Source of the DNA: Schmidtea polychroa
Taxonomy: Eukaryota
DNA length: 64,000 nt
Assembly: GCA_044892525.1 (NCBI GenBank)
Contig: CM097886.1
Coordinates: forward strand, 162,428,312 to 162,492,311
Reading direction: 5' to 3'
In this document: positions 5,516 to 29,342 of the stretch, piece after piece
How the letters are laid out: each line of letters starts with the position of its first letter
Numbering within the stretch: the first letter of the stretch is position 1
The notes under the pieces: model-generated
Seen by the model: the letters and a program-made list of their open reading frames with translations, nothing else
Told to the model about the DNA's origin: nothing
The model's database searches: none
Translations under genes and position numbers: made by a program

Positions 5516-5520
5516 TTTTT
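5516..5520 (+). terminator. Pol III T5 terminator (example; present in every array unit)
   Basis: TTTTT begins 4 nt after the discriminator base and is followed by further T4 tracts. Confidence 0.75.
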
Positions 5521-5607
5521 ACTTTTCACTTTCGACAACAAATAATATTTGATTTTCTGCTACTCTTAAATAATAAGTAGCCTGTTTATTTGTATCTGTA
5601 TTTTGCA

Positions 5608-11200: not shown

Positions 11201-12944
11201 GATACTTGCTTATGCAGATGACATTGCTCTTGTTGCAAAATCTGTTGAAGAACTACAAAAAATAACCGATATCGCTGTTGCAACTGCAGCTGAAATTGGT
11301 TTCGAATACCGACCTGAAAAATGTGGATACCTTCAACTGCCAAATATTGACATAGAAAGTGAAATTTCAATAAATGGCATCAAAATTAGAAAGTTGCAAT
11401 CTGAAGATTTCTATCAATATCTTGGAGTACCTGTAGGTGAAGAGACTGACCAAAATCCATATGACATCCTTGAAAAAGTGGTCTCTGACACGAGAAAGCT
11501 TGCTGATTCTGACTTACTTGGCTGGCAAAAACTAAAAGCCTATAAGATTTTTGTTCATTCACGATTGATCTTTCCCTTTAGAACTAGAGAGATTAAGACT
11601 AGTACTCTTTCGAAACCTAATAGCAACAAGAAACTTTCTGATAACATAACCAGTCAACTGAGAAGTTGCTTTAGAAAAATGCTGATTTTGCCAAAAAACT
11701 CCGAAGTAAGCTATTTCTATAACTCCACTGAAAATGGAGGGGCAAACTGTGTGGATCTTCTTGACGAATATCACACTCAGACAATAACACACATTTTCCG
11801 ATTGCTAACATCAAAGTGTGACTTTGCTAAAAAGATCAACACTGATTCATTGAAATTTGTCACTGGTCCTCGTCTTGGTATAAAAGAACCCACTCTTCAA
11901 GAAAGTCTTGACTGGCTCAATGGTAAAGACATCAAATCACAGCACTCTGGTAAGAAAACGCGATTCCAGAGAGCCAGAAGTGCAATTGCATTTTTCGAAA
12001 AAACCCATAACATCAACATATCATTCATTGTCACAAACCATGAGACATCGCTCTATATAACAACCGCAACGCGTGGCACATGCATCTTGACTTCTGATCT
12101 TCGTCAAACAACTTCTAAGGTCTTGCACATGGCACTTTGTGACTCTTACCTTAGAAAATGGGAGAACGGTTGCACTTCCAACATCATTGCTTCAGCAATC
12201 AAACTTTCACCTCTAATAAATAAAGCAATTTTTCACGGTGATCTGTCTGAATTTGCTTGGAACTTCATTCATCGTGCTCGCACAAACACTCTTTCAATCA
12301 ATGCGAAGCCTTACAATAAAGGTGAAGAAAGACTTTGTCGTCGATGTCACATTGAAGATGAGACAATGTCACACATCCTTCAGAATTGTAAGGTCCATCT
12401 AACTCTTAGTTCTGAGAGGCATGACAATTGTCTTAAACTAATTGCAAATCGTCTGAAAATCAAAGCTCATCTTATTGTCGTAGTAGATAACATGTGTTCA
12501 CTTGTTCCAAACTCGAGGGAACGAGTGGACTTAATGATCACTAACTTGTCCAAAAAAACAATCTTTTTAGTTGATTTGAAATGTCCGAGCGACTCTGTCA
12601 CTAACTTTGAACAAGTTGACAAACGTAATTTGAGGAAATATGATTCTTTAAAGAATGCAATACAGGCTGTCAAACCTGACTTTAAAGTCGAACTTGACAC
12701 TTGCATTATTGGAGCTTTAGGATCTTTTCCTTTGAAAACTTCTGAAATACTCTCTAAAGTAGGTATTAAGGATAAAGAGCTAAAATGTCTATTAAAGGAA
12801 TGTGCGATAAGTAATATCACACATTCTGCCAGGCGGTGGTATTACCACAAGAACGGCACTTTAAAAGACATTGAAAAAGATCAGCTCTCAGATTTTGTAA
12901 ATAATTCACTAAAGCCTGCAAGCAATAGCATCGTCAACTATTGA
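8289..12944 (+). CDS. ORF2 polyprotein: Ulp1/C48-like protease, two degenerate repeats, RT, CCHC knuckle, RLE
   Basis: 1,551 open codons directly after the ORF1 TGA, in the same frame. Protease residues H100/D117/Q160/C166 (numbered from GTG 8295), plus RT YADD, CCHC and RLE motifs. Confidence 0.95.
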   Translation, partial: RCVPASVPTSAPISKETDADSTINIIKHDKNLIIKRDPKIWFTDDDIDSFLENHIINPKFASIKCFIVEILCSNLENDIFPIPERVLKAQIILCPLNINKSHWILFVYCKSSLISYFIDPILLNRHSFTNKTIALKITMALNELFDLKAAMTFHPHDNFSYQNNSYDCGPYICAYAMMICGEWQSLSGSFIETIRKEVHQFKLTPQQKDPKTSGGGLPKFMETIKRNGVKKVSNGNLIYLQKQNSCVTFLISEWYKNKSNITVLSPELTSNVIAQNDTFIRENVTFKQFAGIEHVISVIPDDKSWSLYLFSFALGISYIFNFNNRILTERLIGIGENMSDYMNRFFLSQTKINFNSHHNIDHGSITSGDPQIFASVFIELVEKLLFDNQVSRTSISESLNSFKLHQANEICQNLNMINFKISEEIISTYFSNLKLDVKFILLIPTICSAIIDDCTEHINGFLNYECLIQAQVIFAIIAPPKHREILLILDYNTDEFYILNPITLTGSENCLSICKSLRNKINEIKETPGLVLNFGECPHDTRGSGLVSKILICAFIKNYANDLPLVNLNLREIGNIISSLLPIIKESKRCKNSIPTKINKSKESNLNLKQRKIKIELLLRKVMFLNVNQIIDVINEEFPNRSKTTLKPYLGNKKKTHKITKSKLITKFMTNMKSTVNKIFNDIDVSERPTFQNIVLNFLIKSPFQGNWKNIFNFCKRSEKALNLELFTNVEVFDELKKADNTSPGMDGIQYRDLLLLDPEGKLLTFLYNKIISDKIIPDSWKTFKTLLTPKPGKEGKYDDVSSWRPIALLSVIYKVFASCLASRLTSWINSNELLHIGQKGGSKHDGCVEHNSILSAALEHSKYSVNKPLAIAWLDIKDAFGSVPHDYMWSLLRFIGVSEEFASIIQMLYSNTSTFYSCGHILTPNISIKQGVKQGCPISMILFALAINPVLEAVSQSDSRPFRIGKSPVKILAYADDIALVAKSVEELQKITDIAVATAAEIGFEYRPEKCGYLQLPNIDIESEISINGIKIRKLQSEDFYQYLGVPVGEETDQNPYDILEKVVSDTRKLADSDLLGWQKLKAYKIFVHSRLIFPFRTREIKTSTLSKPNSNKKLSDNITSQLRSCFRKMLILPKNSEVSYFYNSTENGGANCVDLLDEYHTQTITHIFRLLTSKCDFAKKINTDSLKFVTGPRLGIKEPTLQESLDWLNGKDIKSQHSGKKTRFQRARSAIAFFEKTHNINISFIVTNHETSLYITTATRGTCILTSDLRQTTSKVLHMALCDSYLRKWENGCTSNIIASAIKLSPLINKAIFHGDLSEFAWNFIHRARTNTLSINAKPYNKGEERLCRRCHIEDETMSHILQNCKVHLTLSSERHDNCLKLIANRLKIKAHLIVVVDNMCSLVPNSRERVDLMITNLSKKTIFLVDLKCPSDSVTNFEQVDKRNLRKYDSLKNAIQAVKPDFKVELDTCIIGALGSFPLKTSEILSKVGIKDKELKCLLKECAISNITHSARRWYYHKNGTLKDIEKDQLSDFVNNSLKPASNSIVNY

Positions 12945-13423
12945 TGTATATATGTATTTTTTGTTATATATATATTTAGTATTTTAGATGTTCCTCGCCC
13001 TTAAGCGGACTTTAAAATATAATTATTTGTATAAATGTATTTGTTAGATAGCTAACAGGCTTTTGTACTTTGCAAAAGTTTATTTTAGATGCTGCAGATT
13101 GGATATTAGGTTTCTGATGATTGTCGTTAATATCGTTAGTCTAATCTCAAAAGAAAACTGATGATGATATGATCATAAATCAATAATCAAAATGCAATGC
13201 CAGAAATCAAGTCTGATGACAACAAAAAATCAGAGCCAAGGACGATTCGGTGAATTTACAATAACAATTGAGTCGAAATGATTCCAAAAACAAAACATAT
13301 CTGTGAAACATCCTCTTTCTGACTCTTATGTTGTTGTATCTCTTCCGAATGGCATGTTCCATGTAGAACATTGTCCAAATGTATATGAAAGTCAAATTTA
13401 TTATAATTAATAAACGTTATTAA

Positions 13424-13500
13424 GATGGCCGAGTGGTTAAGGCGGTGGACTTAAGATCCACTGGACAATGTCCGCGTGGGTTCGAACCCCACTTCTAGCA
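13424..13500 (+). pseudogene. 5'-truncated tRNA-Leu(UAA), nt 6-82
   Basis: Same junction as at 4556. Confidence 0.9.
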
Positions 13501-13638
13501 ATATTTTTACTTTTCACTTTCGACAACAAATAATGTTGCTCTTAAAAATTATTGAAAGTTAAATATCGTTTCTCCTCATTAATAAAGTGAAGAAGCTTGA
13601 TTTTGGTTTATTAATTTTTTGAAAGTAAATTTTTCAGA

Positions 13639-13720
13639 GCTAGGATGGCCGAGTGGTTAAGGCGGTGGACTTAAGATCCACTGGACAATGTCCGCGTGGG
13701 TTCGAACCCCACTTCTAGCA
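13639..13720 (+). tRNA. tRNA-Leu(UAA)
   Basis: Identical cloverleaf. Confidence 0.97.
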
Positions 13721-13858
13721 ATATTTTTACTTTTCACTTTCGACAACAAATAATGTTGCTCTTAAAAATTATTGAAAGTTAAATATCGTTTCTCCTCATT
13801 AATAAAGTGAAGAAGCTTGATTTTGGTTTATTAATTTTTTGAAAGTAAATTTTTCAGA

Positions 13859-13940
13859 GCTAGGATGGCCGAGTGGTTAAGGCGGTGGACTTAAGATCCA
13901 CTGGACAATGTCCGCGTGGGTTCGAACCCCACTTCTAGCA
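13859..13940 (+). tRNA. tRNA-Leu(UAA)
   Basis: Identical cloverleaf. Confidence 0.97.
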
Positions 13941-14078
13941 ATATTTTTACTTTTCACTTTCGACAACAAATAATGTTGCTCTTAAAAATTATTGAAAGTT
14001 AAATATCGTTTCTCCTCATTAATAAAGTGAAGAAGCTTGATTTTGGTTTATTAATTTTTTGAAAGTAAATTTTTCAGA

Positions 14079-14160
14079 GCTAGGATGGCCGAGTGGTTAA
14101 GGCGGTGGACTTAAGATCCACTGGACAATGTCCGCGTGGGTTCGAACCCCACTTCTAGCA
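14079..14160 (+). tRNA. tRNA-Leu(UAA); intact gene flanking the 5' end of copy 3
   Basis: Identical cloverleaf. The element starts at +35. Confidence 0.97.
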
Positions 14161-14255
14161 ATATTTTTACTTTTCACTTTCGACAACAAATAATATTTGA
14201 TTTTCTGCTACTCTTAAATAATAAGTAGCCTGTTTATTTGTATCTGTATTTTGCA

Positions 14256-15119
14256 ATGGATTGTAATAATTTGAAAATCAATTCTTTTTATTCTAAAAAA
14301 ACTGGATTTATTTCTCGTTCCGACTTAGTGATGGAAGGATTCAATAAACTCAACGGTAAGGATATCAATGAAACTGGATTTGGTTCCTGCTCTCACTCAA
14401 TGGAGGATGATTTCAATAAACTAAACCGTAAGGTTAATTTATCTATTAAATATATAAATAATTGTTTTATGGAACAAGTTGACGGTGCAATTGCTTGCAC
14501 ATAACTTTTTAATAATTATATAAATAATGTTTATGATAATGTTTTTGAAGTCGAGGTCTCCAGAAAGTATGTTGACCGAAACTCTTCACCTTCTTATTCT
14601 TCAAGCATTAGAAAGGATTTTATAAATAGAAGCAATAGTTTTTGCGAAACTGATAAGAAAGTTGCTTCTGTGGAGTTTTCAACTAACAAAATTGACTTTT
14701 CTAGAGTCGTTACAATCGACAACAAATGCATATTAAATAAAAATCTTTTAATAAATAAAAATGAAAATTTCGATAAAAATAATGTATTTATAAAAAATCC
14801 ATCTTTAAAAAATGATTCCTTCCCCAGTGCATTGTCTTCCGAGCTTGAAAGTCCTAATTTAAAAATTACAATTAAAAATAATTTAATTAAAAAATTTAAT
14901 TTACCTAGTTTTGAAAATGATAATTTACAGACCCATAAATTAGCTAACTTAAACAAAGGTAATTTTGATAATTATAATTTTAAAAATCAGAATTATAAAA
15001 TTTCATCAAAAGATATTTCAAAAGAAAATATTAAAAATAAAAAATTCCAAACTTCCCAGAAAACCAGTAAAGCTGTTAATAATTTAAATTTTGTGAAAAA
15101 AATCAGAAAACAAAATTAA
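14256..15119 (+). CDS. ORF0a plus ORF0b of copy 3: one frame interrupted by a single TAA at 14502-14504
   Basis: ATG at 14256, then 82 codons, TAA, and 204 more open Asn/Lys-rich codons that overlap the start of ORF1. Low complexity lowers confidence. Confidence 0.4.
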
Positions 15120-16936
15120 CTTTTAAAGCGGATAATATAAAGTTTGACAAGTCAACCCGAACATTGAATTCAAAAGAAAAACAAGAATTCTTTAGATGTT
15201 TCCCTCAATTTATAAAATTAATAAAATCAAAAGAAACTATTAATAAGCATCATAACATTAATAGTGAACTCTTGAAAATTACCCAGGCTGCAAACCCTCT
15301 AAAAATAATTGGATTTTCAAAATTCTTTTATAGGAATCACAACATCTGTATTTCTTTGAATTCTTTGAAAAATAACACTGTCCATAAAGTAAATCGTTTA
15401 CTGAATGGACACACTAAAACACTCCTAATTGAATCCAAGGTTGTAAAATTTTACAACACAAAGAATAAGTTTGTTTCCGCATCCCCAACCATCAGACGGT
15501 TCTTATATGCTCTTTCTCAGAAATTAGCAGGGACCGCGTCCATTTCAAATACTAAGTACAGGGGCGTACAAATAAATAACATATTAAATGAAATCAAGCA
15601 ACGAGGTGAACTATCTGATTATCTAATAAAATCAAAAATAAAATTTTCTAATGGGGACTTTGTTTTGCTCGATATACTAAATAACTGTGAAGCTGATGAT
15701 ACCGATATTACCTTAAAATCCTCAGCTCTTTCAAGATCAGAATTAAAAGATCTTTACCAGAAATTCCCCGACATTCAGGAGCTTTGTTTTACAGAAAACA
15801 TAGAGAAAAATCCTGAATTACTAAATAATTTAATTCATGACCTAAAATCAAATGAAAACTTTCCCAAAGAGATCTCATTTGTGGGGGGTAAACTAATCAA
15901 AACGTGTAAAATACCAATTTCTGATGTCTCAAATGCTGAGAGTGAATCGGATATTATGTTCAATCTTGGCTTATTGAACCTCTACAACACAGCTGAGAGT
16001 GACAAAACATTAAGGTCTCTTTTCTGTCAGCCAAAATCGTCTGAAAAATTGGTTGACATTATATTTTACCTAAACTATTTACAGTTAAAAGGTGACTTAA
16101 AATACATAACAAATGGAACATATGGCGACTATGTCCACAACTACGTTCGTAATTCCTTGTTGATGTGCTCTGTTATTAACATAGATGATTATGAAACTCT
16201 CTTACGGGAAAATATTGAAAGTTGGGCGCCCAACATGGTTGATATGATACCATCATCATCATACTATAGCTCTAGCTGCCTTGAAAGACTTTTAAAACTT
16301 CGACAGTGGAAACTGTCAGGAGAGATTGATAGAATTCACAACATAATCTCTCCTGAAACCATCAATAAAGTCAATTCATTTCTTGACAAAATCGACGAAC
16401 TCTGTCCACAAAAGGCTATCCAATTAAAGGCTCTTGAGAAATTAAGCAGTGGAATTAATAAAATGGAATGGGACACAAAGGAAGAAGAGATGATTAAGGC
16501 TAGAAGATTTCTCTTCTTCATCCTTAGAGACAAAAAGAAATTTTTATTTACCAGTAAATCTTCCTACCGTATACCTCAGCACTGTAGGAAGATATGCACA
16601 GCCAATATGACTTGCATTATCACAGGTATGCTTGATGTTCTGCTGACATGGTTGATTGAAAATAACGATGAACAGAAGACGGACACATCTGAAACAAACA
16701 TCTCGGAAACTGTCAATGACTCCGCAGAAGCAGATGCGAAGGAGACATCTCGGTCCATAGAGATATACGACACTTTGGAGTCTAAACTAAAGGAACATAC
16801 AACTCTGAAACGACAGCTGCCGGTTGATTTGGATATAATTCCATCTACACCCACAATTTCCAGTTGTGATCAACAGGAGGACCTACTAACAAAATCAAGT
16901 AGGAAAACGAGGAAAGTAGTCTCCAAAATAAAATGA
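15083..16936 (+). CDS. ORF1, copy 3
   Basis: Near-identical to 6435-8288 (e.g. W>R in TIRxFLY). Confidence 0.8.
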   Translation, partial: FKFCEKNQKTKLTFKADNIKFDKSTRTLNSKEKQEFFRCFPQFIKLIKSKETINKHHNINSELLKITQAANPLKIIGFSKFFYRNHNICISLNSLKNNTVHKVNRLLNGHTKTLLIESKVVKFYNTKNKFVSASPTIRRFLYALSQKLAGTASISNTKYRGVQINNILNEIKQRGELSDYLIKSKIKFSNGDFVLLDILNNCEADDTDITLKSSALSRSELKDLYQKFPDIQELCFTENIEKNPELLNNLIHDLKSNENFPKEISFVGGKLIKTCKIPISDVSNAESESDIMFNLGLLNLYNTAESDKTLRSLFCQPKSSEKLVDIIFYLNYLQLKGDLKYITNGTYGDYVHNYVRNSLLMCSVINIDDYETLLRENIESWAPNMVDMIPSSSYYSSSCLERLLKLRQWKLSGEIDRIHNIISPETINKVNSFLDKIDELCPQKAIQLKALEKLSSGINKMEWDTKEEEMIKARRFLFFILRDKKKFLFTSKSSYRIPQHCRKICTANMTCIITGMLDVLLTWLIENNDEQKTDTSETNISETVNDSAEADAKETSRSIEIYDTLESKLKEHTTLKRQLPVDLDIIPSTPTISSCDQQEDLLTKSSRKTRKVVSKIK

Positions 16937-19900
16937 AGGTGCGTGCCTGCATCAGTCCCAACATCTGCCCCAATCTCGAAGGAGACTGATGCAGACAGCA
17001 CAATAAATATTATTAAACATGATAAAAATTTGATAATAAAACGCGACCCAAAGATCTGGTTTACTGATGATGATATTGATAGTTTTCTCGAAAATCACAT
17101 CATCAACCCAAAATTTGCGTCTATTAAATGTTTTATTGTTGAGATTTTGTGCTCTAACCTTGAGAATGACATTTTCCCAATTCCGGAAAGAGTCTTGAAA
17201 GCACAAATAATATTATGCCCCCTTAACATCAACAAATCTCACTGGATCTTGTTCGTATATTGTAAGTCTTCTCTCATTTCTTACTTCATCGATCCAATCC
17301 TTCTCAATCGGCATAGTTTTACAAATAAAACAATAGCCCTTAAAATCACAATGGCTCTGAATGAATTATTTGACCTTAAAGCAGCCATGACTTTTCATCC
17401 ACATGATAACTTTTCGTACCAAAATAATAGTTACGATTGTGGGCCATACATCTGCGCATATGCCATGATGATTTGTGGAGAATGGCAGAGCTTGTCGGGC
17501 AGCTTCATCGAAACCATCAGGAAAGAGGTCCACCAATTTAAACTTACTCCCCAACAGAAAGATCCCAAAACATCGGGGGGTGGCCTTCCAAAATTCATGG
17601 AGACAATCAAACGGAATGGAGTTAAGAAAGTGAGTAATGGTAACCTGATATATCTCCAGAAACAAAACTCATGTGTCACATTCCTGATTAGTGAATGGTA
17701 TAAAAATAAGAGCAACATTACTGTTCTTTCTCCTGAACTGACATCGAATGTTATTGCACAAAACGATACATTCATTAGAGAAAATGTCACGTTTAAACAA
17801 TTTGCTGGAATAGAACATGTCATCAGTGTCATTCCAGACGACAAGAGTTGGAGTCTTTATCTTTTCTCTTTTGCTTTAGGAATCAGTTACATTTTCAACT
17901 TTAACAACCGAATTCTAACTGAGAGACTAATCGGTATAGGAGAAAACATGTCAGACTATATGAATAGATTTTTCCTTTCTCAAACGAAAATTAACTTCAA
18001 TAGTCACCACAACATCGATCACGGTTCCATAACATCTGGCGACCCACAGATATTTGCTTCTGTTTTCATTGAATTAGTCGAGAAACTACTTTTTGACAAT
18101 CAGGTTTCTCGCACAAGTATCAGTGAGTCCCTAAATTCTTTTAAACTTCACCAAGCAAATGAGATCTGCCAGAATTTAAATATGATTAATTTTAAAATTA
18201 GCGAAGAAATTATTTCAACTTATTTCAGTAATTTAAAATTAGATGTAAAATTTATATTGCTGATTCCGACGATTTGTTCTGCAATCATTGATGACTGCAC
18301 CGAACACATTAATGGGTTTTTAAATTATGAATGTCTCATTCAAGCACAGGTAATTTTTGCCATTATTGCACCCCCAAAACATCGGGAAATTCTTTTAATT
18401 CTCGATTATAACACTGATGAGTTTTATATTCTTAATCCTATTACGCTGACTGGAAGTGAAAACTGTCTATCTATTTGCAAGAGTCTTAGAAACAAAATTA
18501 ATGAAATTAAAGAAACACCTGGCCTTGTATTGAATTTTGGTGAATGTCCGCATGACACCCGCGGATCTGGCCTTGTAAGTAAAATTCTTATTTGCGCTTT
18601 CATTAAAAACTATGCGAACGACTTGCCCCTTGTAAATTTAAACCTGCGTGAGATAGGTAACATCATCAGTTCGCTACTTCCGATTATCAAAGAGTCAAAA
18701 AGATGTAAAAATTCAATCCCTACTAAAATATATAAAATCAAAGAAAGTAACTTAAACTTGAAACAGCGCAAAATCAAGATTGAGTTACTTCTCAGAAAAG
18801 TAATGTTTCTTAATGTAAATCAAATCATTGATGTTATCAATGAAGAGTTCCCAAATCGTTCAAAAACTACACTCAAACCGTATTTGGGTAATAAGAAAAA
18901 AACTCATAAAATCACTAAAAGCAAATTAATTACAAAATTCATGACTAACATGAAATCAACAGTTAACAAAATATTCAATGACATAGATGTCAGTGAACGA
19001 CCAACTTTTCAGAATATTGTTTTAAATTTCCTTATAAAATCTCCTTTTCAAGGAAATTGGAAAAACATTTTCAACTTCTGCAAACGTTCAGAGTAAGCAC
19101 TAAATCTGGAACTCTTCACAAATGTTGAAGTATTTGATGAACTGAAGAAAGCTGACAACACAAGTCCTGGTATGGATGGAATACAATATCGTGACTTATT
19201 GCTTCTTGATCCTGAGGGTAAACTGCTAACGTTTTTATATAATAAAATTATTTCCGACAAAATCATACCAGACAGTTGGAAGACTTTTAAAACCCTTCTT
19301 ACTCCTAAGCCTGGCAAAGAAGGCAAATATGACGACGTCTCATCTTGGCGCCCAATTGCTCTACTGTCTGTCATTTATAAGGTTTTTGCTTCTTGTCTAG
19401 CAAGTCGTCTGACGAGTTGGATAAACTCGAATGAACTGTTACACATTGGTCAGAAAGGTGGCTCAAAACATGATGGATGTGTTGAGCACAACTCGATTCT
19501 TTCTGCTGCATTAGAACATTCTAAGTATAGCGTAAACAAACCTCTTGCAATTGCCTGGCTCGACATAAAAGATGCTTTCGGCAGTGTTCCACATGATTAT
19601 ATGAGGTCCTTACTGCGATTCATTGGAGTGAGTGAAGAATTTGCATCCATCATCCAGATGCTATATTCCAACACAAGCACTTTCTATAGTTGTGGTCACA
19701 TTCTAACTCCAAATATTTCGATAAAGCAAGGTGTCAAGCAAGGATGCCCTATTTCCATGATTTTGTTTGCTTTGGCCATCAACCCAGTACTTGAAGCGGT
19801 ATCTCAATCTGATTCGAGACCCTTCAGGATAGGAAAATCTCCTGTTAAGATACTTGCTTATGCAGATGACATTGCTCTTGTTGCAAAATCTGTTGAAGAA

Positions 19901-21592
19901 CTACAAAAAATAACCGATATCGCTGTTGCAACTGCAGCTGAAATTGGTTTCGAATACCGACCTGAAAAATGTGGATACCTTCAACTGCCAAATATTGACA
20001 TAGAAAGTGAAATTTCAATAAATGGCATCAAAATTAGAAAGTTGCAATCTGAAGATTTCTATCAATATCTTGGAGTACCTGTAGGTGAAGAGACTGACCA
20101 AAATCCATATGACATCCTTGAAAAAGTGGTCTCTGACACGAGAAAGCTTGCTGATTCTGACTTACTTGGCTGGCAAAAACTAAAAGCCTATAAGATTTTT
20201 GTTCATTCACGATTGATCTTTCCCTTTAGAACTAGAGAGATTAAGACTAGTACTCTTTCGAAACCTAATAGCAACAAGAAACTTTCTGATAACATAACCA
20301 GTCAACTGAGAAGTTGCTTTAGAAAAATGCTGATTTTGCCAAAAAACTCCGAAGTAAGCTATTTCTATAACTCCACTGAAAATGGAGGGGCAAACTGTGT
20401 GGATCTTCTTGACGAATATCACACTCAGACAATAACACACATTTTCCGATTGCTAACATCAAAGTGTGACTTTGCTAAAAAGATCAACACTGATTCATTG
20501 AAATTTGTCACTGGTCCTCGTCTTGGTATAAAAGAACCCACTCTTCAAGAAAGTCTTGACTGGCTCAATGGTAAAGACATCAAATCACAGCACTCTGGTA
20601 AGAAAACGCGATTCCAGAGAGCCAGAAGTGCAATTGCATTTTTCGAAAAAACCCATAACATCAACATATCATTCATTGTCACAAACCATGAGACATCGCT
20701 CTATATAACAACCGCAACGCGTGGCACATGCATCTTGACTTCTGATCTTCGTCAAACAACTTCTAAGGTCTTGCACATGGCACTTTGTGACTCTTACCTT
20801 AGAAAATGGGAGAACGGTTGCACTTCCAACATCATTGCTTCAGCAATCAAACTTTCACCTCTAATAAATAAAGCAATTTTTCACGGTGATCTGTCTGAAT
20901 TTGCTTGGAACTTCATTCATCGTGCTCGCACAAACACTCTTTCAATCAATGCGAAGCCTTACAATAAAGGTGAAGAAAGACTTTGTCGTCGATGTCACAT
21001 TGAAGATGAGACAATGTCACACATCCTTCAGAATTGTAAGGTCCATCTAACTCTTAGTTCTGAGAGGCATGACAATTGTCTTAAACTAATTGCAAATCGT
21101 CTGAAAATCAAAGCTCATCTTATTGTCGTAGTAGATAACATGTGTTCACTTGTTCCAAACTCGAGGGAACGAGTGGACTTAATGATCACTGACTTGTCCA
21201 AAAAAACAATCTTTTTAGTTGATTTGAAATGTTCGAGCGACTCTGTCACTAACTTTGAACAAGTTGACAAACGTAATTTGAGGAAATATGATTCTTTAAA
21301 GAATGCAATACAGGCTGTCAAACCTGACTTTAAAGTCGAACTTGACACTTGCATTATTGGAGCTTTAGGGTCTTTTCCTTTGAAAACTTCTGAAATACTC
21401 TCTAAAGTAGGTATTAAGGATAAAGAGCTAAAATGTCTATTAAAGGAATGTGCGATAAGTAATATCACACATTCTGACAGGCGGTGGTATTACCACAAGA
21501 ACGGCACTTTAAAAGACATTGAAAAAGATCAGCTCTCAGATTTTGTAAATAATTCACTAAAGCCTGCAAGCAATAGCATCGTCAACTATTGA
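16937..21592 (+). pseudogene. ORF2, copy 3, broken by a premature TAA just upstream of the RT domain
   Basis: ORF track fragments 16943-19096 and 19172-21592 are in one frame; TCAGAGTAAGCA versus TCAGAGAAAGCA in copies 1 and 2. Confidence 0.9.
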
Positions 21593-22071
21593 TGTATATA
21601 TGTATTTTTTGTTATATATATATTTAGTATTTTAGATGTTCCTCGCCCTTAAGCGGACTTTAAAATATAATTATTTGTATAAATGTATTTGTTAGATAGC
21701 TAACAGGCTTTTGTACTTTGCAAAAGTTTATTTTAGATGCTGCAGATTGGATATTAGGTTTCTGATGATTGTCGTTAATATCGTTAGTCTAATCTCAAAA
21801 GAAAACTGATGATGATATGATCATAAATCAATAATCAAAATGCAATGCCAGAAATCAAGTCTGATGACCACAAAAAATCAGAGCCAAGGACGATTCGGTG
21901 AATTTAAAACAACAATTGAGTCGAAATGATTCCAAAAACAAAACATATCTGTGAAACATCCTCTTTCTGACTCTTATGTTGTTGTATCTCTTCCGAATGG
22001 CATGTTCCATGTAGAACATTGTCCAAATGTATAGAAAAGTCAAATTTATTATAATTAATAAACGTTATTAA

Positions 22072-22182
22072 GATGGCCGAGTGGTTAAGGCAGTGGACTT
22101 AAGATCCACTGGACAATGTCCGCGTGGGTTCGAACCCCACTTCTAGCAATATTTTTACTTTTCACTTTCGACAACAAATAAT
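22072..22182 (+). repeat. Single 111-bp target duplicate (tRNA-Leu nt 6 to +34) separating copies 3 and 4
   Basis: Only this segment lies between the two elements. It has one G>A change (GCAGTGG). Confidence 0.92.
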
Positions 22183-25100
22183 ATTTGATTTTCTGCTACT
22201 CTTAAATAATAAGTAGCCTGTTTATTTGTATCTGTATTTTGCAATGGATTGTAATAATTTGAAAATCAATTCTTTTTATTCTAAAAAAACTGGATTTATT
22301 TCTCGTTCCGACTCAGTGATGGAAGGATTCAATAAACTCAACGGTAAGGATATCAATGAAACTGGATTTGGTTCCTGCTCTCACTCAATGGAGGATGATT
22401 TCAATAAACTAAACCGTAAGGTTAATTTAATTATTAAATATATAAATAATTGTTTTATGGAACAAGTTGACGGTGCAATTGCTTGCACATAACTTTTTAA
22501 TAATTATATAAATAATGTTTATGATAATGTTTTTGAAGTCGAGGTCTCCAGAAAGTATGTTGACCGAAACTCTTCACCTTCTTATTCTTCAAGCATTAGA
22601 AAGGATTTTATAAATAGAAGCAATAGTTTTTGCGAAACTGATAAGAAAGTTGCTTCTGTGGAGTTTTCAACTAACAAAATTGACTTTTCTAGAGTCGTTA
22701 CAATCGACAACAAATGCATATTAAATAAAAATCTTTTAATAAATATAAATGAAAATTTCGATAAAAATAATGTATTTATAAAAAATCCATCTTTAAAAAA
22801 TGATTCCTTCCCCAGTGCATTGTCTTCCGAGCTTGAAAGTCCTAATTTAAAAATTACAATTAAAAATAATTTAATTAAAAAATTTAATTTACCTAGTTTT
22901 GAAAATGATAATTTACAGACCCATAAATTAGTTAACTTAAACAAAGGTAATTTTGATAATTATAATTTTAAAAATCAGAATTATAAAATTTCATCAAAAG
23001 ATATTTCAAAAGAAAATTTTTAAAAATAAAAAATTCCAAACTTCCCAGAAAACCAGTAAAGCTGTTAATAATTTAAATTTTGTGAAAAAAAATCAGAAAA
23101 CAAAATTAACTTTTAAAGCGGATAATATAAAGTTTGACAAGTCAACCCGAACATTGAATTCAAAAGAAAAACAAGAATTCTTTAGATGTTTCCCTCAATT
23201 TATAAAATTAATAAAATCAAAAGAAACTATTAATAAGCATCATAACATTAATAGTGAACTCTTGAAAATAACCCAGGCTGCAAACCCTCTAAAAATAATT
23301 GGATTTTCAAAATTCTTTTATAGGAATCACAACATCTGTATTTCTTTGAATTTTTTGAAAAATAACACTGTCCATAAAGTAAATCGTTTACTGAATGGAC
23401 ACACTAAAACACTCCTAATTGAATCCAAGGTTGTAAAATTTTACAACACAAAGAATAAGTTTGTTTCCGCATCCCCAACCATCAGACGGTTCTTATATGC
23501 TCTTTCTCAGAAATTAGCAGGGACCGCGTCCATTTCAAATACTAAGTACAGGGGCGTACAAATAAATAACATATTAAATGAAATCAAGCAACGAGGTGAA
23601 CTTTCTGATTATCTAATAAAATCAAAAATAAAATTTTCTAATGGGGATTTTGTTATGCTCGATATACTAAATAACTGTGAAGCTGATGATAACGATATTA
23701 CCTTAAAATCCTCAGCTCTTTCAAGATCAGAATTAAAAGATCTTTACCAGAAATTCCCCGACATTCAGGAGCTTTGTTTTACAGAAAACATAGAGAAAAA
23801 TCCTGAATTACTAAATAATTTAATTCATGACCTAAAATCAAATGAAAACTTTCCCAAAGAGATCTCATTTGTGGGGGGTAAACTAATCAAAACGTGTAAA
23901 ATACCAATTTCTGATGTCTCAAATGCTGAGAGTGAATCGGATATTATGTTCAATCTTGGCTTATTGAACCTCTACAACACAGCTGAGAATGACAAAACAT
24001 TAAGGTCTCTTTTCTGTCAGCCAAAATCGTCTGAAAAATTGGTTGACGTTATATTTTACCTAAACTATTTACAGTTAAAAGGTGACTTAAAATACATAAC
24101 AAATGGAACATATGGCGACTATGTCCACAACTACGTTCGTAATTCCTTGTTGATGTGCTCTGTTATTAACATGAGGACCTACTAACAAAATCAAGTAGGA
24201 AAACGAGGAAAGTAGTCTCCAAAATAAAATGAAGGTGCGTGCCTGCATCAGTCCCAACATCTGCCCCAATCTCGAAGGAGACTGATGCAGACAGCACAAT
24301 AAATATTATTAAACATGATAAAAATTTGATAATAAAACGCGACCCAAAGATCTGGTTTACTGATGATGATATTGATAGTTTTCTCGAAAATCACATCATC
24401 AACCCAAAATTTGCGTCTATTAAATGTTTTATTGTTGAGATTTTGTGCTCTAACCTTGAGAATGACATTTTCCCAATTCCGGAAAGAGTCTTGAAAGCAC
24501 AAATAATATTATGCCCCCTTAACATCAACAAATCTCACTGGATCTTGTTCGTATATTGTAAGTCTTCTCTCATTTCTTACTTCATCGATCCAATCCTTCT
24601 CAATCGGCATAGTTTTACAAATAAAACAATAGCCCTTAAAATCACAATGGCTCTGAATGAATTATTTGACCTTAAAGCAGCCATGACTTTTCATCCACAT
24701 GATAACTTTTCGTACCAAAATAATAGTTACGATTGTGGGCCATACATCTGCGCATATGCCATGATGATTTGTGGAGAATGGCAGAGCTTGTCGGGCAGCT
24801 TCATTGAGACCATCAGGAAAGAGGTCCACCAATTTAAACTTACTCCACAACAGAAAGATCCCAAAACATCGGGGGGTGGCCTTCCAAAATTCATGGAGAC
24901 AATCAAACGGAATGGAGTTAAGAAAGTGAGTAATGGTAACCTGATATATCTCCAGAAACAAAACTCATGTGTCACATTCCTGATTAGTGAATGGTATAAA
25001 AATAAGAGCAACATTACTGTTCTTTCTCCTGAACTGACATCGAATGTTATTGCACAAAACGATACATTCATTAGAGAAAATGTCACGTTTAAACAATTTG

Positions 25101-27543
25101 CTGGAATAGAACATGTCATCAGTGTCATTCCAGACGACAAGAGTTGGAGTCTTTATCTTTTCTCTTTTGCTTTAGGAATCAGTTACATTTTCAACTTTAA
25201 CAACCGAATTCTAACTGAGAGACTAATCGGTATAGGAGAAAACATGTCAGACTATATGAATAGATTTTTCCTTTCTCAAACGAAAATTAACTTCAATAGT
25301 CACCACAACATCGATCACGGTTCCATAACATCTGGCGACCCACAGATATTTGATTCTGTTTTCATTGAATTAGTCGAAAAACTACTTTTTGACAATCAGG
25401 TTTCTCGCACAAGTATCAGTGAGTCCCTAAATTCTTTTAAACTTCACCAAGCAAATGAGATCTGCCAGAATTTAAATATGATTAATTTTAAAATTAGCGA
25501 AGAAATTATTTCAACTTATTTCAGTAATTTAAAATTAGATGTAAAATTTATATTGCTGAATCCGACGATTTGTTCTGCAATCATTGATGATTGCACCGAA
25601 CACATTAATGAGTTTTTAAATTATGAATGTCTCATTCAAGCACAGGTAATTTTTGCCATCATTGCACCCCCAAAACATCGGGAAATTCTTTTAATTCTCG
25701 ATTATAACACTGATGAGTTTTATATTCTTAATCCTATTACGCTGACTGGAGGTGAAAACTGTCTTAGAAACAAAATTAATGAAATTAAAGAAACACCTGG
25801 CCTTGTTTTTGAATTTTGGTGAATGTCCGCATGACACCCGCGGATTTGGCCTTGTAAGTAAAATTCTTATTTGCGCTTTCATTAAAAACTATGCGAACGA
25901 CTTGCCCCTTGTAAATTTAAACCTGCGTGAGATAGGTAACATCATCAGTTCGCTACTTCCGATTATCAAAGAGTCAAAAAGATGTAAAAATTCAATCCCT
26001 ACTAAAATCAATAAAATCAAAGAAAGTAACTTAAACTTGAAACAGCGCAAAATCAAGATTGAGTTACTTCTCAGAAAAGTAATGTTTCTTAATGTAAATC
26101 AAATCATTGATGTCATCAATGAAGAGTTCCCAAATCGTTCAAAAACTACACTCAAACCGTATTTGGGTAATAAGAAAAAAACTCATAAAATCACTAAAAG
26201 CAAATTAATTACAAAATTCATGACTAACATGAAATCAACAGTTAACAAAATATTCAATGACATAGATGTCAGTGAACGACCAACTTTTCAGAATATTGTT
26301 TTAAATTTCCTTATAAAATCTCCTTTTCAAAGAAATTGGAATAGCATCTTCAACTTCTTCAAACGTTCAGAGTAAGCACTAAATCTGGAACTCTTCACAA
26401 ATGTTGAAGTTTTTGATGAACTGAAGAAAGCTGACAACACAAGTCCTGGTATGGATGGAATACAATATCGTGACTTGTTGCTTCTTGATCCTGAGGGTAA
26501 CTTGCTAACGTTTTTATATAATAAAATTATTTCCGACAAAATCATACCAGACAGTTGGAAGACTTTTAAAACTCTTCTAACTCCTAAGCCTGGCAAAGAA
26601 GGCAAATATGACGACGTCTCATCTTGGCGCCCAATTGCTCTACTGTCTGTCATTTATAAGGTTTTTGCTTCTTGTCTAGCAAGTCGTCTGACGAGTTGGA
26701 TAAACTCGAACGAATTGTTACACATTGGTCAGAAAGGTGGCTCAAAACATGATGGATGTGTTGAGCCCAACTCGATTCTTTCTGCTGCATTAGAACATTC
26801 TAAGTATAGCCTAAACAAACCTCTTGCAATTGCGTGGTTCGACATAAAAGATCCTTTCGGCAGTGTTCCACATGATTATATGAGGTCCTTACTGCGATTC
26901 ATTGGAGTGAGTGAAGAATTTGCATCCATCATCCAGATGCTATATTCCAACACAAGCACTTTCTATAGTTGTGGTCACATTCTAACTCCAAATATTTCGA
27001 TAAAGCAAGGTGTCAAGCAAGGATGCCCTATTTCCATGATTTTGTTTGCTTTGGCCATCAACCCAGTACTTGAAGCGGTATCTCAATCTGATTCGAGACC
27101 CTTCAGGATAGGAAAATCTCCTGTTAAGATACTTGCTTATGCAGATGACATTGCTCTTGTTGCAAAATCTGTTGAAGAACTACAAAAAATAACCGATATC
27201 GCTGTTGCAACTGCAGCTGAAATTGGTTTCGAATACCGACCTGAAAAATGTGGATACCTTCAACTGCCAAATATTGACATAGAAAGTGAAATTTCAATAA
27301 ATGGCATCAAAATTAGAAAGTTGCAATCTGAAGATTTCTATCAATATCTTGGAGTACCTGTAGGTGAAGAGACTGACCAAAATCCATATGACATCCTTGA
27401 AAAAGTGGTCTCTGACACGAGAAAGCTTGCTGATTCTGACTTACTTGGCTGGCAAAAACTAAAAGCCTATAAGATTTTTGTTCATTCACGATTGATCTTT
27501 CCCTTTAGAACTAGAGAGATTAAGACTAGTACTCTTTCGAAAC
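22183..27543 (+). mobile_element. Retrotransposon copy 4, decayed (frameshifts, 694-bp deletion in ORF1, 3'-truncated)
   Basis: Same 5' junction; deletion junction at 24172/24173; frameshifts near 25.76-25.81 kb; TAA at 26373-26375. Ends ...CTTTCGAAAC, fused to the tRNA anticodon loop. Confidence 0.93.
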
Positions 27544-27593
27544 TTAAGATCCACTGGACAATGTCCGCGTGGGTTCGAACCCCACTTCTAGCA
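27542..27593 (+). pseudogene. 3' part of tRNA-Leu(UAA), from the anticodon loop onward
   Basis: ACTTAAGATCCACTGGAC...CACTTCTAGCA, followed by a diverged array spacer. Confidence 0.88.
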
Positions 27594-27733
27594 ATATTTT
27601 TACTTTTCACTTTCGACAGCAAATAATTTTGCTCTTAAAAATATTTTTGAAGGTTAAATATCGTTTCTCCTCATTAATAACGTGAAGAAGCTTGATTTTG
27701 GTTTATTAATTTTTTGAAAGTAAATTTTTCAGA

Positions 27734-27787
27734 GCTAAGATGGCCGAGTGGTTAAGGCGGTGGACTTAATATATTCTGGACAATGTC
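27734..27787 (+). pseudogene. Degenerate, 3'-truncated tRNA-Leu at the array edge
   Basis: GCTAAGATGGCCGAGTGGTTAAGGCGGTGGACTTAATATATTCTGGACAATGTC; anticodon stem mutated and T arm missing. Confidence 0.85.
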
Positions 27788-29342
27788 AAATTTAAGGTTT
27801 CTATTATGAACCAATAAAGCTAAAATTCTGTTTTCATCACCTTGGGATTTCCCGATTATTGCTTTAAAGAACCTTATTACATAAAAAATATTTTAAGTAA
27901 TAACCATCGTTATTATTCTAACACTTTTGATATATTGTCTTTATTGCTTTCTTTATAGTTACTATGGGGAAATCAAATACTCAACTCAAACTCTGCTTTT
28001 CGTGTTCGGAAAAGAACGCCTTTCCCTCCAGATTGATAAATATAAGCAGGGCTCACTTGACCCTGTTACAAGAGCAGTTGCAAACCTTGTATTAGGTATA
28101 TACGAAGCGCGAGCTGGAAGCTCGAATACAGGGATTGAGTTTCGCTGAGAGAGCTAACGTCATTCTAGCTTACCATCTAGCCACTACCGAAGAGATGATC
28201 CGATCAACAACCTGCGTCGGGTGCTCATTGCATGTGACCGCCTCTCGGTCACGGGCCTAACTGCATCAACTAGTTATGTAAAGCCTTCGACAATCATCGA
28301 TCTCTGTACAGCTAGTCAACACATCCGGTCGGAGCCCAACGTGTGGAAGCCGAAAATGAAAGCGGCACCTTTAACCTATTATGTACGGATATTAATCCAC
28401 CCGAACTCGATCTTGCTGCATCTGACCTGGCTTTTTCTTTCACTATAGATTCTGCTATCTTCAATCTGGACGAGTTGTTGGCCGAAGCCGAAAGGGATTG
28501 GATGTAACCAACCTGGAACAAATCCTAGTATCATAATTTTGTTGATTGTGTTTCATCAAATAAATTTTGTTTTACTTCTTTGATTTCTTGTTTTAATTTA
28601 TCCCTTGATGCATCATAATAAGTTGTTATTGCATTCATCTTAATGTTCAGGTTATGTTCATGTATTCGTAAACAAATTAATACATCTCGTAGATAATGAG
28701 GACCACCAAATTTCACGTGTTACGAACGTATCAACTTAGCATCGTGGTCATAGACCTAAGTCCTTTTAGCGTCAGTCTAGAACCTAATCAGAGAGTATAG
28801 GAAAGAGTAGTTTTAACACAGAAGCTCATCTGTCTATTGACTCTCGACAACTGTGTGCATCACCAACATGACTATCGTCATGGGTACACAGGTCGGAAAA
28901 CAAAAGTCATGAAGCGTTTACCCAAGAGCTGATAAACACTATCTCGTTTCGCTTTTATCTTGCCTGTAAACGCCAACAATTAACTTAAAATGTTGCAGAT
29001 GCTAAAATAATAATTGATGATGTAAGTATTATTATTGAGAAATTCATCATGTTTTATTAAATAACTTAACCGTAGATTTGGTATTTTAATAGAAATATAT
29101 CAATAAACCTGATTGTATTCTTAACAAAATGCAAATGAATGTTATTTAATATTTATACATTTCTAACTTTCGCTACTTTTTATTATCCTTATTATCCATA
29201 TTATCCTTTTAACACTTTTTAGGTAACATTTTCTCCTTTCAAACTAATATTATTCTCACAACTCAAATATATGTATTCTTATTTGTTTATTTCAATAAAT
29301 AAACCATTTATTTATAATACCTTTCTTAAATACTTCCGTATG

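What the first reader, a model, noticed from the sequence alone, without database searches (positions are those of the whole stretch)
22072..22182. Apparent 111-bp target-site duplication that spares the host tRNA and regenerates the target
Seen: each inter-element spacer equals n x 220 + 111 bp (991, 771, 111). The extra 111 bp is always tRNA nt 6 to +34, so an intact tRNA with terminator stays upstream and a 5'-clipped duplicate lies downstream. Established: non-LTR TSDs are usually under ~20 bp; the rotifer R9 element is the known exception at 126 bp. Inference: the two strand cuts are ~111 bp apart and bracket the A box, B box and terminator, roughly the region occupied by Pol III factors such as TFIIIC. 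This makes insertion nearly harmless and permits serial re-insertion at the same tRNA, which gives the copy 3 / 111 bp / copy 4 arrangement. Alternative: the 111 nt are carried in the element RNA.
Basis: partly seen in the sequence, partly recalled or inferred. Interest (0 to 1): 0.85.

Follow-up and report, generated by a model that had tools for sequence, protein, structure and literature searches.

The report
Retrotransposon copies in a tRNA-Leu array
Four copies of a site-specific retrotransposon sit at the same point of a 220-bp tRNA-Leu tandem repeat; the 111 bp left between them could be a very long target duplication, but in this repeat a 109-bp target deletion gives exactly the same sequence.

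Summary
Spacers of 991, 771 and 111 bp separate four copies of a 7,877-bp element. Each spacer is n x 220 + 111, and the 111 bp is tRNA-Leu(UAA) nt 6 through 34 bp past its end.

The element is a two-ORF non-LTR retrotransposon of the NeSL/R2 group: Ulp1-like protease, reverse transcriptase, CCHC knuckle and restriction-like endonuclease. tRNA-gene-specific members of this group are already published (planarian LIN15_SM and LIN25_SM, NeSL-1_TV). The 3' end of LIN25_SM closely resembles this one.

In a perfect 220-bp array, a +111 duplication and a -109 deletion (111 = 220 - 109) give identical DNA. So does a flank carried in the RNA. Kojima and Jurka met the same ambiguity for Utopia in U2 arrays.

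No relative I could fetch shows both junctions. Relatives nick tRNA-Val and tRNA-Phe at fixed internal positions. One has its 5' end about 60 bp past an SRP RNA gene.

I favour a long duplication (about 0.5), by analogy with R9 and because the 5' ends lie just past Pol III genes. "Harmless" and "TFIIIC footprint" remain inference.

This is a new member of a known kind, of moderate interest.

The parts
1..4555 (+). Copy 1 of the element, 5' part cut off by the window start (corresponds to element positions 3323-7877); the ORF2 part is open
   Evidence: blastn against copy 2: 99.7% identity, 13 mismatches, no gaps; no internal stop in the ORF2 part
4556..5546 (+). tRNA-Leu(UAA) array, 991 bp = 4.5 units of 220 bp. 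The first tRNA is clipped (starts at nt 6). Intact genes lie at 4771-4852, 4991-5072, 5211-5292 and 5431-5512
   Evidence: TRF period 220, 100% matches; ARAGORN and Rfam; junction read-out
5547..13423 (+). Copy 2, full length, 7,877 bp, both ORFs open. It has the fewest private changes of copies 1-3
6516..8288 (+). ORF1 of copy 2 (590 codons from the preceding stop). There is no ATG near its start, no Pfam family and no fold match
   Evidence: homologues of 23-33% identity only in metagenome contigs
8295..12944 (+). ORF2 of copy 2 (1,549 codons). Domains: Ulp1/C48 protease 8544-8822; reverse transcriptase 10665-11429; CCHC knuckle 12336-12389; restriction-like endonuclease motif 12522-12581
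   Evidence: Pfam PF02902 at 23 bits and PF00078 at E 5e-26. Invariant YADD, C..C..H..C and R.D...D.K columns in 15 relatives. Best PDB matches are R2 proteins 9nl2, 9nl3, 9dou and 8gh6
13424..14194 (+). tRNA-Leu array, 771 bp = 3.5 units. The first tRNA is clipped. Intact genes lie at 13639-13720, 13859-13940 and 14079-14160
14195..22071 (+). Copy 3, full length, 22 mismatches to copy 2. ORF1 (15164-16936) is open. ORF2 (16943-21592) carries one stop
22072..22182 (+). The finding: a 111-bp spacer made of tRNA-Leu nt 6-82 (22072-22148) plus a 34-bp trailer. Features: A box 22074-22084; B box 22126-22136; T5 22152-22156; T4 22159-22162; motif CGACAACAAAT 22169-22179; one G-to-A change at 22092
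22183..27547 (+). Copy 4, oldest and degraded (about 1% from copy 2). ORF1 has one large frameshifting deletion. ORF2 has one in-frame indel, one frameshift, one stop and no 3' part. The right end is fused to tRNA nt about 33 through a few bases of microhomology
27548..27790 (+). Right-hand end of the tRNA array: the tRNA 3' part plus trailer, one diverged spacer, then a degenerate tRNA 5' half. No tRNA lies beyond this point
   Evidence: sequence read; no ARAGORN or Rfam call beyond 22149

Best explanation
A NeSL/LIN-type non-LTR retrotransposon with a restriction-like endonuclease inserts by target-primed reverse transcription into tRNA-Leu(UAA) genes.

Shown: the element's 3' end is always joined to tRNA nt 6, and its 5' end is always joined 34 bp past the end of a tRNA-Leu gene.

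Inferred: the first (bottom-strand) nick falls between nt 5 and 6. The second (top-strand) break falls 111 bp further downstream in the same gene unit, beyond both T-runs and a few bases after the motif CGACAACAAAT. Filling the two long single-stranded stretches duplicates nt 6 to +34. That leaves a whole gene upstream, a clipped gene downstream and a reusable target. Re-use of that target gives the arrangement copy 3 / 111 bp / copy 4.

The number of whole units between copies (4, 3, 0) is set by where in the array each copy landed and by later unequal exchange between identical units.
For: Identical junctions in all copies.

Domain set and R2-type reverse transcriptase.

Branch lengths of copies 1, 2 and 3 are very unequal: 12, 1 and 16 private changes, P about 1e-4 for equal thirds. 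The copies are therefore not one clock-like DNA duplication.

Relatives end inside other Pol III genes at fixed positions:
- L002: tRNA-Val nt 14/15.
- L085: tRNA-Phe at about nt 18.
- L001: a D-arm-like flank.

The 5' end of L003 lies about 60 bp past the end of an SRP RNA gene. In both cases where a 5' junction is visible, it lies just past a Pol III terminator.

The L002 tRNA-Val cluster has irregular spacing of 290-455 bp and unlike trailers. A cut at a fixed distance downstream fits that better than a cut in the preceding gene's trailer.

R9 in the same superclade makes a 126-bp duplication (PMC6895275).

When second-strand nicking by R2 protein fails, the outcome shifts to large duplications, not deletions (PMC13486585).

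A trailer string next to the 5' junction recurs in L003 (14 of 16 bases, shuffle p about 0.002) and at the end of the L085 flank (p about 0.03).
Against: In a perfect 220-bp array this reading cannot be told from a 109-bp deletion or from a carried or annealed flank.

No locus in hand shows both junctions of one copy outside a perfect array.

Copies 2-4 share exactly the same 5' junction. That is unusual for R2-like elements if each junction was made afresh.

Variants shared in conflicting patterns (copies 3+4 at 8 sites, copies 1+4 at 3 sites) show gene conversion or several source lines, so the independence of the copies is uncertain.

The trailer motif was defined after seeing it.

No DNA-binding domain that could read a second site was found.
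Confidence: 0.5

Rival explanations
1. Target deletion. The top strand is broken 109 bp upstream of the first nick, in the trailer (+34) of the preceding unit. Each insertion then removes the 104-bp inter-gene spacer plus nt 1-5 of the nicked gene, and so destroys one tRNA gene. The 111-bp spacer is what is left of one unit when two neighbouring units are both hit.
For: 991, 771 and 111 equal 5, 4 and 1 x 220 - 109, and the resulting sequence is identical.

Kojima and Jurka read the same picture this way for oomycete Utopia in U2 arrays: an intact gene upstream and a clipped gene downstream. They noted that they could not exclude a duplication (PMC4640811).

R2Bm cuts the top strand upstream of the first nick, by 2 bp.

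The 111-bp spacer then needs no re-insertion next to an existing copy's end.
Against: No deletion of this size is firmly documented for this group.

Relatives sit in clusters with irregular spacing (L002) and next to an SRP RNA gene (L003). There, a cut in 'the previous gene's trailer' would lie at very different distances.

Failed second-strand nicking in R2 yields duplications.
Confidence: 0.25
2. Carried or annealed 5' flank. The source RNA starts upstream of the element body, as a read-through or co-transcript that includes array sequence up to +34. The two DNA breaks are close together, as in R2. The 3' end of the cDNA finds homology in the array and is joined there, so the '+34 | element' junction is inherited from the source copy and not made at each insertion.
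For: Copies 2, 3 and 4 have exactly the same 5' junction, including four bases (ATTT) ahead of the 5'-terminal string shared with relatives.

The bases just upstream of the 5' junction are similar in the window, L003 and L085, although the neighbouring genes differ.

R2 RNAs that carry upstream target sequence join by annealing (PMC3774820 abstract; PMC13486585).
Against: No promoter or ribozyme was found: Rfam finds no HDV-like or other ribozyme at the 5' end.

The upstream tRNA gene ends in two T-runs.

The motif is also present in every native unit that has no element next to it, including the old diverged unit at 27548-27790. So it is target sequence here.
Confidence: 0.12
3. One insertion followed by DNA-level amplification. 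A single event created the junctions, and unequal crossing-over between tRNA units then multiplied the block 'element + units'. The three spacers would then be one observation, not three.
For: All full tRNA units are 100% identical over 1.7 kb, while the elements differ by about 0.3%. That shows active exchange in the array.

The periods 8868, 8648 and 7988 differ by multiples of 220.

Neighbouring copies 3 and 4 share 8 variants.
Against: Private changes of 12, 1 and 16 in copies 1, 2 and 3 do not fit any clock-like duplication tree.

Copy 4 is about 1% diverged and broken, while copy 2 is intact.

This model does not explain the 111 bp itself. It only changes how many times it arose.
Confidence: 0.1
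4. The tRNA piece is a 3' module of the element. The mobile unit would run from the 5' end to +34 and insert after a trailer motif with little target change.
For: Contig L085 begins at the element's 5'-terminal string and ends a few bases after the trailer motif, as if the unit 'element + clipped tRNA-Phe + 77 bp' were the repeat.
Against: LIN25_SM copies have the homologous 3' end (...cgttttaa) followed by different flanks. LIN15_SM copies are followed by three different tRNA-Arg genes, each with its own trailer (S6 Fig of PMC4640811).

AATAAA lies about 10 nt before the 3' junction in the window, L001, L002 and L085.

The clipped tRNA-Val of L002 sits in a true tRNA-Val cluster.
Confidence: 0.03

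Closest known systems
LIN25_SM and LIN15_SM (R5/LIN lineage of the NeSL clade, planarian Schmidtea mediterranea; Kojima and Jurka 2015, PMC4640811)
   Same: Both are tRNA-gene-specific RLE non-LTR elements. In S6 Fig, LIN25_SM ends ...ttattataaataataaacgttttaa and joins tRNA-Glu near nt 5. That is very like this element's ...TTATTATAATTAATAAACGTTATTAA joined to nt 6. LIN15_SM joins tRNA-Arg near nt 27, and the one 5' junction shown is near nt 66, so its two junctions also overlap by about 40 bp.
   Different: The target here is tRNA-Leu(UAA). The 5' junction lies outside the gene, at +34. I could not obtain LIN protein sequences, so the relationship rests on the printed DNA ends and on the target type. 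The paper does not discuss long duplications for LIN elements.
R9 of bdelloid rotifers (Gladyshev and Arkhipova 2009)
   Same: It is an RLE element of the R2 superclade with an exceptionally long target duplication of 126 bp (quoted in PMC6895275).
   Different: R9 sits in 28S rDNA, where the repeat unit is far longer than the duplication, so its duplication is unambiguous. Here the array period of 220 bp makes +111 and -109 equivalent. I could not read the R9 paper itself.
Utopia in oomycete U2 snRNA arrays (PMC4640811)
   Same: It is a NeSL-clade element in a short tandem array of a small RNA gene, with an intact gene upstream and a clipped gene downstream. The authors state that deletion and duplication cannot be separated. 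A 29%-identical relative with a Ulp1 domain (L090) ends in a U2 fragment.
   Different: The target gene differs. Utopia usually has one ORF with N-terminal zinc fingers, whereas this element has two ORFs and no recognisable zinc finger or Myb domain upstream of the RT.
NeSL-1 of Caenorhabditis elegans and Utopia-1_TSP
   Same: [quoted passage not shown] The domain is present here, with H, D, Q and C columns conserved.
   Different: Their targets are the spliced-leader exon and the U2 gene.
R2 (Bombyx and avian R2 proteins)
   Same: The RT is most similar to R2 proteins with solved structures. TPRT from a sequence-specific first nick is the expected mechanism.
   Different: R2 cuts the second strand 2 bp from the first. 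R2 has N-terminal zinc finger and Myb domains and a 5' HDV-like ribozyme. None of these was found here.
Dictyostelium TRE5-A/TRE3 and yeast Ty3 (Pol III-complex-guided integration)
   Same: All are associated with tRNA genes and leave the gene usable.
   Different: Those elements land outside the gene, at a distance set by TFIIIB or TFIIIC, and use other enzymes. This element and its relatives are joined at one fixed nucleotide inside the gene. This comparison rests on general knowledge and on the PMC5391098 abstract.

Membership tests
RLE-type non-LTR retrotransposons (R2 superclade, NeSL clade) | Non-LTR-type reverse transcriptase | tested here: met
   PF00078 at E 5e-26. The best solved-structure matches are R2 proteins, E 2e-49 to 5e-23. 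YADD is invariant in 15 relatives.
RLE-type non-LTR retrotransposons (R2 superclade, NeSL clade) | C-terminal CCHC knuckle followed by a PD-(D/E)XK restriction-like endonuclease, and no APE domain | tested here: met
   Invariant C1348, C1351, H1360 and C1365, and R1410, D1412, D1427 and K1429. A weak zf-RVT hit. No APE family in Pfam. This is motif-level evidence only; no endonuclease model matched.
RLE-type non-LTR retrotransposons (R2 superclade, NeSL clade) | [quoted passage not shown] | tested here: met
   PF02902 at 23 bits against a cut-off of 20.7. H100, D117, Q160 and C166 are conserved.
RLE-type non-LTR retrotransposons (R2 superclade, NeSL clade) | Insertion at one fixed site of a multicopy RNA gene, with a precise 3' junction | tested here: met
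   Three identical 3' junctions at tRNA-Leu nt 5/6. Relatives sit at fixed sites in tRNA-Val and tRNA-Phe.
RLE-type non-LTR retrotransposons (R2 superclade, NeSL clade) | Placement inside the NeSL clade (R5/LIN branch) in an RT phylogeny with reference elements | not testable with these tools
   No Repbase or reference NeSL, R5 or LIN proteins came back as named hits. There are only indirect signs: 3'-end likeness to LIN25_SM and a U2-associated relative.
Long target-site duplication of the R9 type | The same >100-bp target segment on both sides of one insertion, in a context where it is otherwise single | tested here: inconclusive
   The segment is on both sides, but the context is a perfect 220-bp array in which a 109-bp deletion gives the same result. 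No solitary insertion is in the window or in the fetched loci.
R2-like 5' processing | HDV-like self-cleaving ribozyme at the element's 5' end | tested here: not met
   No ribozyme family at gathering score in the window, nor at E up to 10 in 5300-6600. Divergent ribozymes can escape Rfam.
Pol III-complex-tethered integration (TRE5-A, TRE3, Ty3) | Insertion outside the gene at a distance window set by TFIIIB or TFIIIC, not at a fixed nucleotide inside it | tested here: not met
   The 3' junction is at a fixed internal nucleotide here and in relatives. The position differs between families: about nt 5, 14/15, about 18 and about 27.

The most novel reading that the evidence does not exclude
This lineage may use a two-part target. 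One part is a family-specific nick inside a Pol III gene (tRNA-Leu, tRNA-Val, tRNA-Phe, perhaps SRP RNA). The other is a shared short trailer motif (CGA-N-AACAAAT) that sets the second break some 110-180 bp downstream. Every insertion would then copy the whole internal promoter plus terminator, leave a working gene and create a fresh target. Over time such duplications could help to build or reshape the short-period tRNA arrays in which these elements live.
Probability: 0.15. Interest if true: 0.75.

Novelty: new member of a known kind. Interest (0 to 1): 0.45.

Why it matters
If the 111 bp is a true duplication, this would be the second RLE retrotransposon after R9 with first and second breaks more than 100 bp apart. 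It would also be the first in which the duplicated piece is a complete Pol III transcription unit.

That would bear on an open question in LINE biology: how and where the second strand is broken. It would also show a way for a parasite to use an essential multicopy gene without consuming it.

If it is a deletion, each copy costs the host one tRNA gene and the element is an ordinary array parasite like Utopia.

Either way, the locus is a clean and nearly intact example (copy 2) of the tRNA-targeting NeSL/LIN elements, which are so far known mainly from Repbase entries.

Tried and rejected
1. Is the 104-bp rest of the 220-bp unit a shrunken element? Local alignment to the element's ends and to the whole element scores no better than shuffles. 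Rejected.

2. HDV-like or other ribozyme at the 5' end: none found.

3. Hammerhead in the 43-nt dimer at 42709-42794: no Rfam match.

4. Both junctions in relatives. I used 12 contig look-ups:
- L001, L002 and L085 give 3' junctions only.
- L003 gives a 5' flank only.
- L085 and L088 start at the element's first bases.
- L086 and L087 stop before the 3' end.
- L089 and L004 are uninformative.
- Three places had no DNA.

5. The JGI metagenome scan gave only distant RTs and no tRNAs. The viral-contig scan gave nothing.

6. ORF1:
- The word-indexed search found nothing.
- The full HMMER scan found 14 unnamed relatives.
- AlphaFold gave mean pLDDT 69, and Foldseek against the PDB gave no match below E 0.4.
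- Pfam gave nothing for ORF1 or for the ORF2 N-terminal 720 residues beyond Ulp1.

7. Host identity: a FoxC-like exon only shows a metazoan absent from the protein collection. 'Planarian' is an inference from the LIN25_SM likeness.

8. Reading contig ends as element ends (L085): considered, but assembly-graph behaviour makes it unsafe.

a. These reveal where its internal deletion lies.
b. In my working I recalled typical tRNA and snRNA sequences from memory to number junction positions. The numbering given for L002 and L085 rests. That for L001 is left open. That for the LIN elements is approximate, from the paper's own figure.

Full report
OBSERVATION

The window opens inside a copy of a 7,877-bp element and holds four copies in the same orientation:
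- Copy 1: 1-4555.
- Copy 2: 5547-13423.
- Copy 3: 14195-22071.
- Copy 4: 22183-27547.

Between the copies lie 991, 771 and 111 bp. The first two stretches are perfect tandem repeats of a 220-bp unit, with 100% matches. Each unit is an 82-nt tRNA-Leu(UAA) gene plus 138 bp.

All 3' junctions read ...CGTTATTAA|GATGGCC, where the native gene reads GCTAG|GATGGCC. All 5' junctions read ...CAAATAAT|ATTTGATTTTC, where native units continue GTTGCTC. The 111 bp at 22072-22182 is therefore tRNA nt 6-82 plus 34 bp of trailer. It holds the A box, the B box and two T-runs.

Two details need correcting. First, the tRNA in the 111-bp spacer is the clipped one, so copy 4 has no intact gene upstream. Rfam scores clipped genes about 47 bits against 62 for intact ones. 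Second, the spacer carries one G-to-A change at 22092.

WHAT THE ELEMENT IS

Copy 2 has two open frames.

ORF2 (8295-12944) has four recognisable parts:
- A Ulp1/C48 protease domain (PF02902).
- A reverse transcriptase (PF00078, E 5e-26).
- A C-terminal C-x2-C...H...C knuckle.
- An R.D...D.K endonuclease motif.

The last two are invariant across 15 relatives, as is YADD. The closest solved structures are R2 retrotransposon proteins. Pfam finds no APE domain, zinc finger or Myb domain.

ORF1 (6516-8288) has no ATG near its start, no Pfam family and no structural match.

This is the architecture of the NeSL clade of restriction-like-endonuclease non-LTR elements, in which NeSL-1 and Utopia-1_TSP also carry the Ulp1-like protease (PMC4640811). 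That paper already reports tRNA-gene-specific members: NeSL-1_TV (tRNA-Pro), and planarian LIN15_SM (tRNA-Arg) and LIN25_SM (tRNA-Glu). In its S6 Fig, the 3' end of LIN25_SM and its junction near tRNA nt 5 are strikingly like those seen here. A 29%-identical relative with a Ulp1 domain ends in a U2 snRNA fragment, as Utopia does.

The host is a metazoan that is not in the protein collection. That it is a flatworm is an inference only.

THE COPIES

State of each copy:
- Copy 2: open in both ORFs.
- Copy 1: its ORF2 part is open.
- Copy 3: one stop in ORF2.
- Copy 4: about 1% diverged. ORF1 has one large frameshifting deletion. ORF2 has one in-frame indel, one frameshift and one stop, and lacks its 3' part.

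The right end of copy 4 is fused to tRNA nt about 33. It is followed by one diverged unit and a degenerate half tRNA, where the array ends.

In the region shared by copies 1-3, the private changes number 12, 1 and 16. No clock-like duplication tree gives one short and two long branches (P about 1e-4), so the copies are not simply one block duplicated.

With copy 4 added, shared variants conflict: copies 3+4 at 8 sites and copies 1+4 at 3 sites. Gene conversion or several source lines must therefore be allowed for.

The tRNA units show no difference over 1.7 kb, while the elements differ by about 0.3%. The array is being homogenised, and the unit counts (4, 3, 0) can change.

THE CENTRAL POINT

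991, 771 and 111 are n x 220 + 111, but they are equally n x 220 - 109.

A top-strand break 111 bp downstream of the first nick, in the same unit, gives a duplication. A break 109 bp upstream, in the trailer of the preceding unit, gives a deletion. The two outcomes are base-for-base identical in a perfect array.

The same is true if the flank up to +34 travels in the RNA, or if the cDNA end is joined by homology to a neighbouring unit.

Kojima and Jurka describe this dilemma for Utopia in oomycete U2 arrays. They leaned towards deletion while admitting that duplication was possible. Their S6 Fig suggests that the planarian tRNA-Arg genes hit by LIN15_SM are also a short-period array. So the roughly 40-bp overlap of that element's two junctions is ambiguous in the same way.

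The window has no solitary or array-edge insertion. Nothing in it can settle the matter.

RELATIVES

The closest ORF2 relatives (58-40% identity) are unnamed proteins on 5-8-kb metagenome and Logan contigs.

Three contigs show 3' junctions:
- L002: joined to tRNA-Val at nt 14/15, inside a cluster of tRNA-Val genes with irregular spacing and unlike trailers.
- L085: joined to a tRNA-Phe at about nt 18.
- L001: joined to a D-arm-like string.

All have AATAAA about 10 nt before the junction.

One contig shows a 5' flank. L003 begins with the last 115 nt of a metazoan SRP RNA gene (Rfam E 5e-15), followed by T-runs. The element's 5'-terminal string appears about 60 bp after the gene's end.

So in both families where a 5' junction is visible, it lies shortly past the terminator of a Pol III gene.

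The 16 bases before the junction are 14/16 identical between the window and L003 (shuffle p about 0.002). A similar string ends the 3' flank of L085, about 133 bp from its 3' junction (p about 0.03). This is suggestive but post hoc. The string is also in every native unit of the window, so here it is target sequence.

No contig has both junctions of one copy.

MECHANISM AND WEIGHTS

Shown:
- Site-specific insertion, with fixed junctions at nt 5/6 and +34.
- An RLE/RT protein of the R2 type.

Inferred:
- The first nick is at nt 5/6, with TPRT from it.

I rate duplication, by a second break 111 bp downstream, at about 0.5. The reasons are:
- The R9 precedent of 126 bp.
- 5' ends just past Pol III genes in two families, including an SRP RNA gene. 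I would not expect SRP RNA genes to stand in short arrays; that is general knowledge, not tested here.
- The irregular L002 cluster.
- The recent finding that R2 insertions without proper second-strand nicking shift to large duplications (PMC13486585).

The other weights are:
- Deletion: about 0.25.
- A carried or annealed 5' flank: about 0.12. It would neatly explain the identical 5' junctions.
- Amplification of one event: about 0.1.
- A 3' tRNA module: about 0.03. It is contradicted by LIN25_SM and LIN15_SM copies with varied flanks.

THE TFIIIC IDEA

The two junctions do bracket the A box, the B box and the terminators. Nothing tested here links them to Pol III factors. Different families use different fixed nucleotides inside the gene, which points to sequence-specific cutting. 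'Nearly harmless' holds only if the duplication reading is right. Under deletion, each copy costs one gene.

NOVELTY

tRNA-targeting NeSL/LIN elements, very long duplications (R9) and the array ambiguity (Utopia) are all published.

What is new:
- The tRNA-Leu(UAA) target.
- A nearly intact two-ORF copy.
- The family-wide picture (tRNA-Val, tRNA-Phe, an SRP RNA neighbour).
- The possible trailer motif.

I file it as a new member of a known kind. It has a modest chance of being a new variant: a long duplication of a whole Pol III unit.

LIMITS AND SLIPS

- The R9 paper itself could not be read.
- I also recalled typical tRNA and snRNA sequences from memory while numbering junctions. The positions given for L002 and L085 rest, and the others are marked approximate.

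Noticed in passing
L003:1-180: A 36-44%-identical relative has, just upstream of its 5' end, the last 115 nt of a metazoan SRP (7SL) RNA gene (Rfam RF00017, E 5e-15) followed by T-runs. To my knowledge, an SRP RNA gene has not been reported as a neighbour or target of a NeSL-type element.
   Followed up: partly
window 22169-22179 (also 5533, 14181 and every native unit); L003:162-172; L085:7592-7601: The string CGA(N)AACAAAT lies 3-10 bp before the 5' junction in the window and in L003. It also lies at the very end of L085's 3' flank. Background is about 3e-5 per base in these loci. Shuffle p is about 0.002 for window against L003 and about 0.03 for window against L085. An exact 12-mer copy also sits inside the element at 6069, 14717 and 22705.
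   Followed up: partly
window 13353-13423 and the same place in copies 1 and 3; L001:6925-6995: The 3' UTR end is conserved with the 58% relative. A small hairpin-like string (ATGTTCCATGT.GAACAT) is followed by an AT-rich tail with AATAAA about 10 nt before the junction. There is no poly(A) tail.
   Followed up: partly
L090:8918-8966: A 29%-identical relative with a Ulp1 domain and a single 2,081-codon ORF ends in a U2 snRNA fragment (model positions 35-84). It is Utopia-like. A second ORF (6527-7948) with a 12-bp tandem repeat lies before that fragment.
   Followed up: no
window 4556-5546 and 13424-14194: All eight full tRNA units are 100% identical, including 138 bp of non-coding spacer. The flanking element copies differ by about 0.3%. 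The array is being homogenised faster than the elements.
   Followed up: partly
window copies 3 and 4 (14195-27547): The neighbouring copies 3 and 4 share 8 variants against copy 2, while copies 1 and 4 share 3. The patterns conflict, which suggests gene conversion between copies or several source lineages.
   Followed up: partly
L085:1-20; L088:1-20: Two independent metagenome contigs begin within a few bases of the element's 5'-terminal string (GATTTTYC-like), as if assemblies break exactly at the 5' junction.
   Followed up: no
window 30038-31905, minus strand: Three adjacent ORF pieces give weak DUF4371 and DUF659 hits (hAT-type transposase-related). This is probably a decayed DNA transposon just right of the tRNA array.
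   Followed up: no
window 46008-46607: An exon encodes the start of a forkhead domain. The best matches are FoxC/crocodile-like proteins of many animals at low coverage. The host species is not in the protein collection.
   Followed up: partly
window 42709-42794: Two tandem copies of a 43-nt unit contain CTGATGAG and a 20-nt hairpin (GTCACCCGAATACGGGTGAC). There is no Rfam match, so it is not shown to be a hammerhead.
   Followed up: yes
window 6516-8288: ORF1 is open for 590 codons, but its first ATG lies far inside. Relatives have 150-400 extra N-terminal residues with no detectable counterpart in the 969 bp upstream. How ORF1 is started is unclear.
   Followed up: partly
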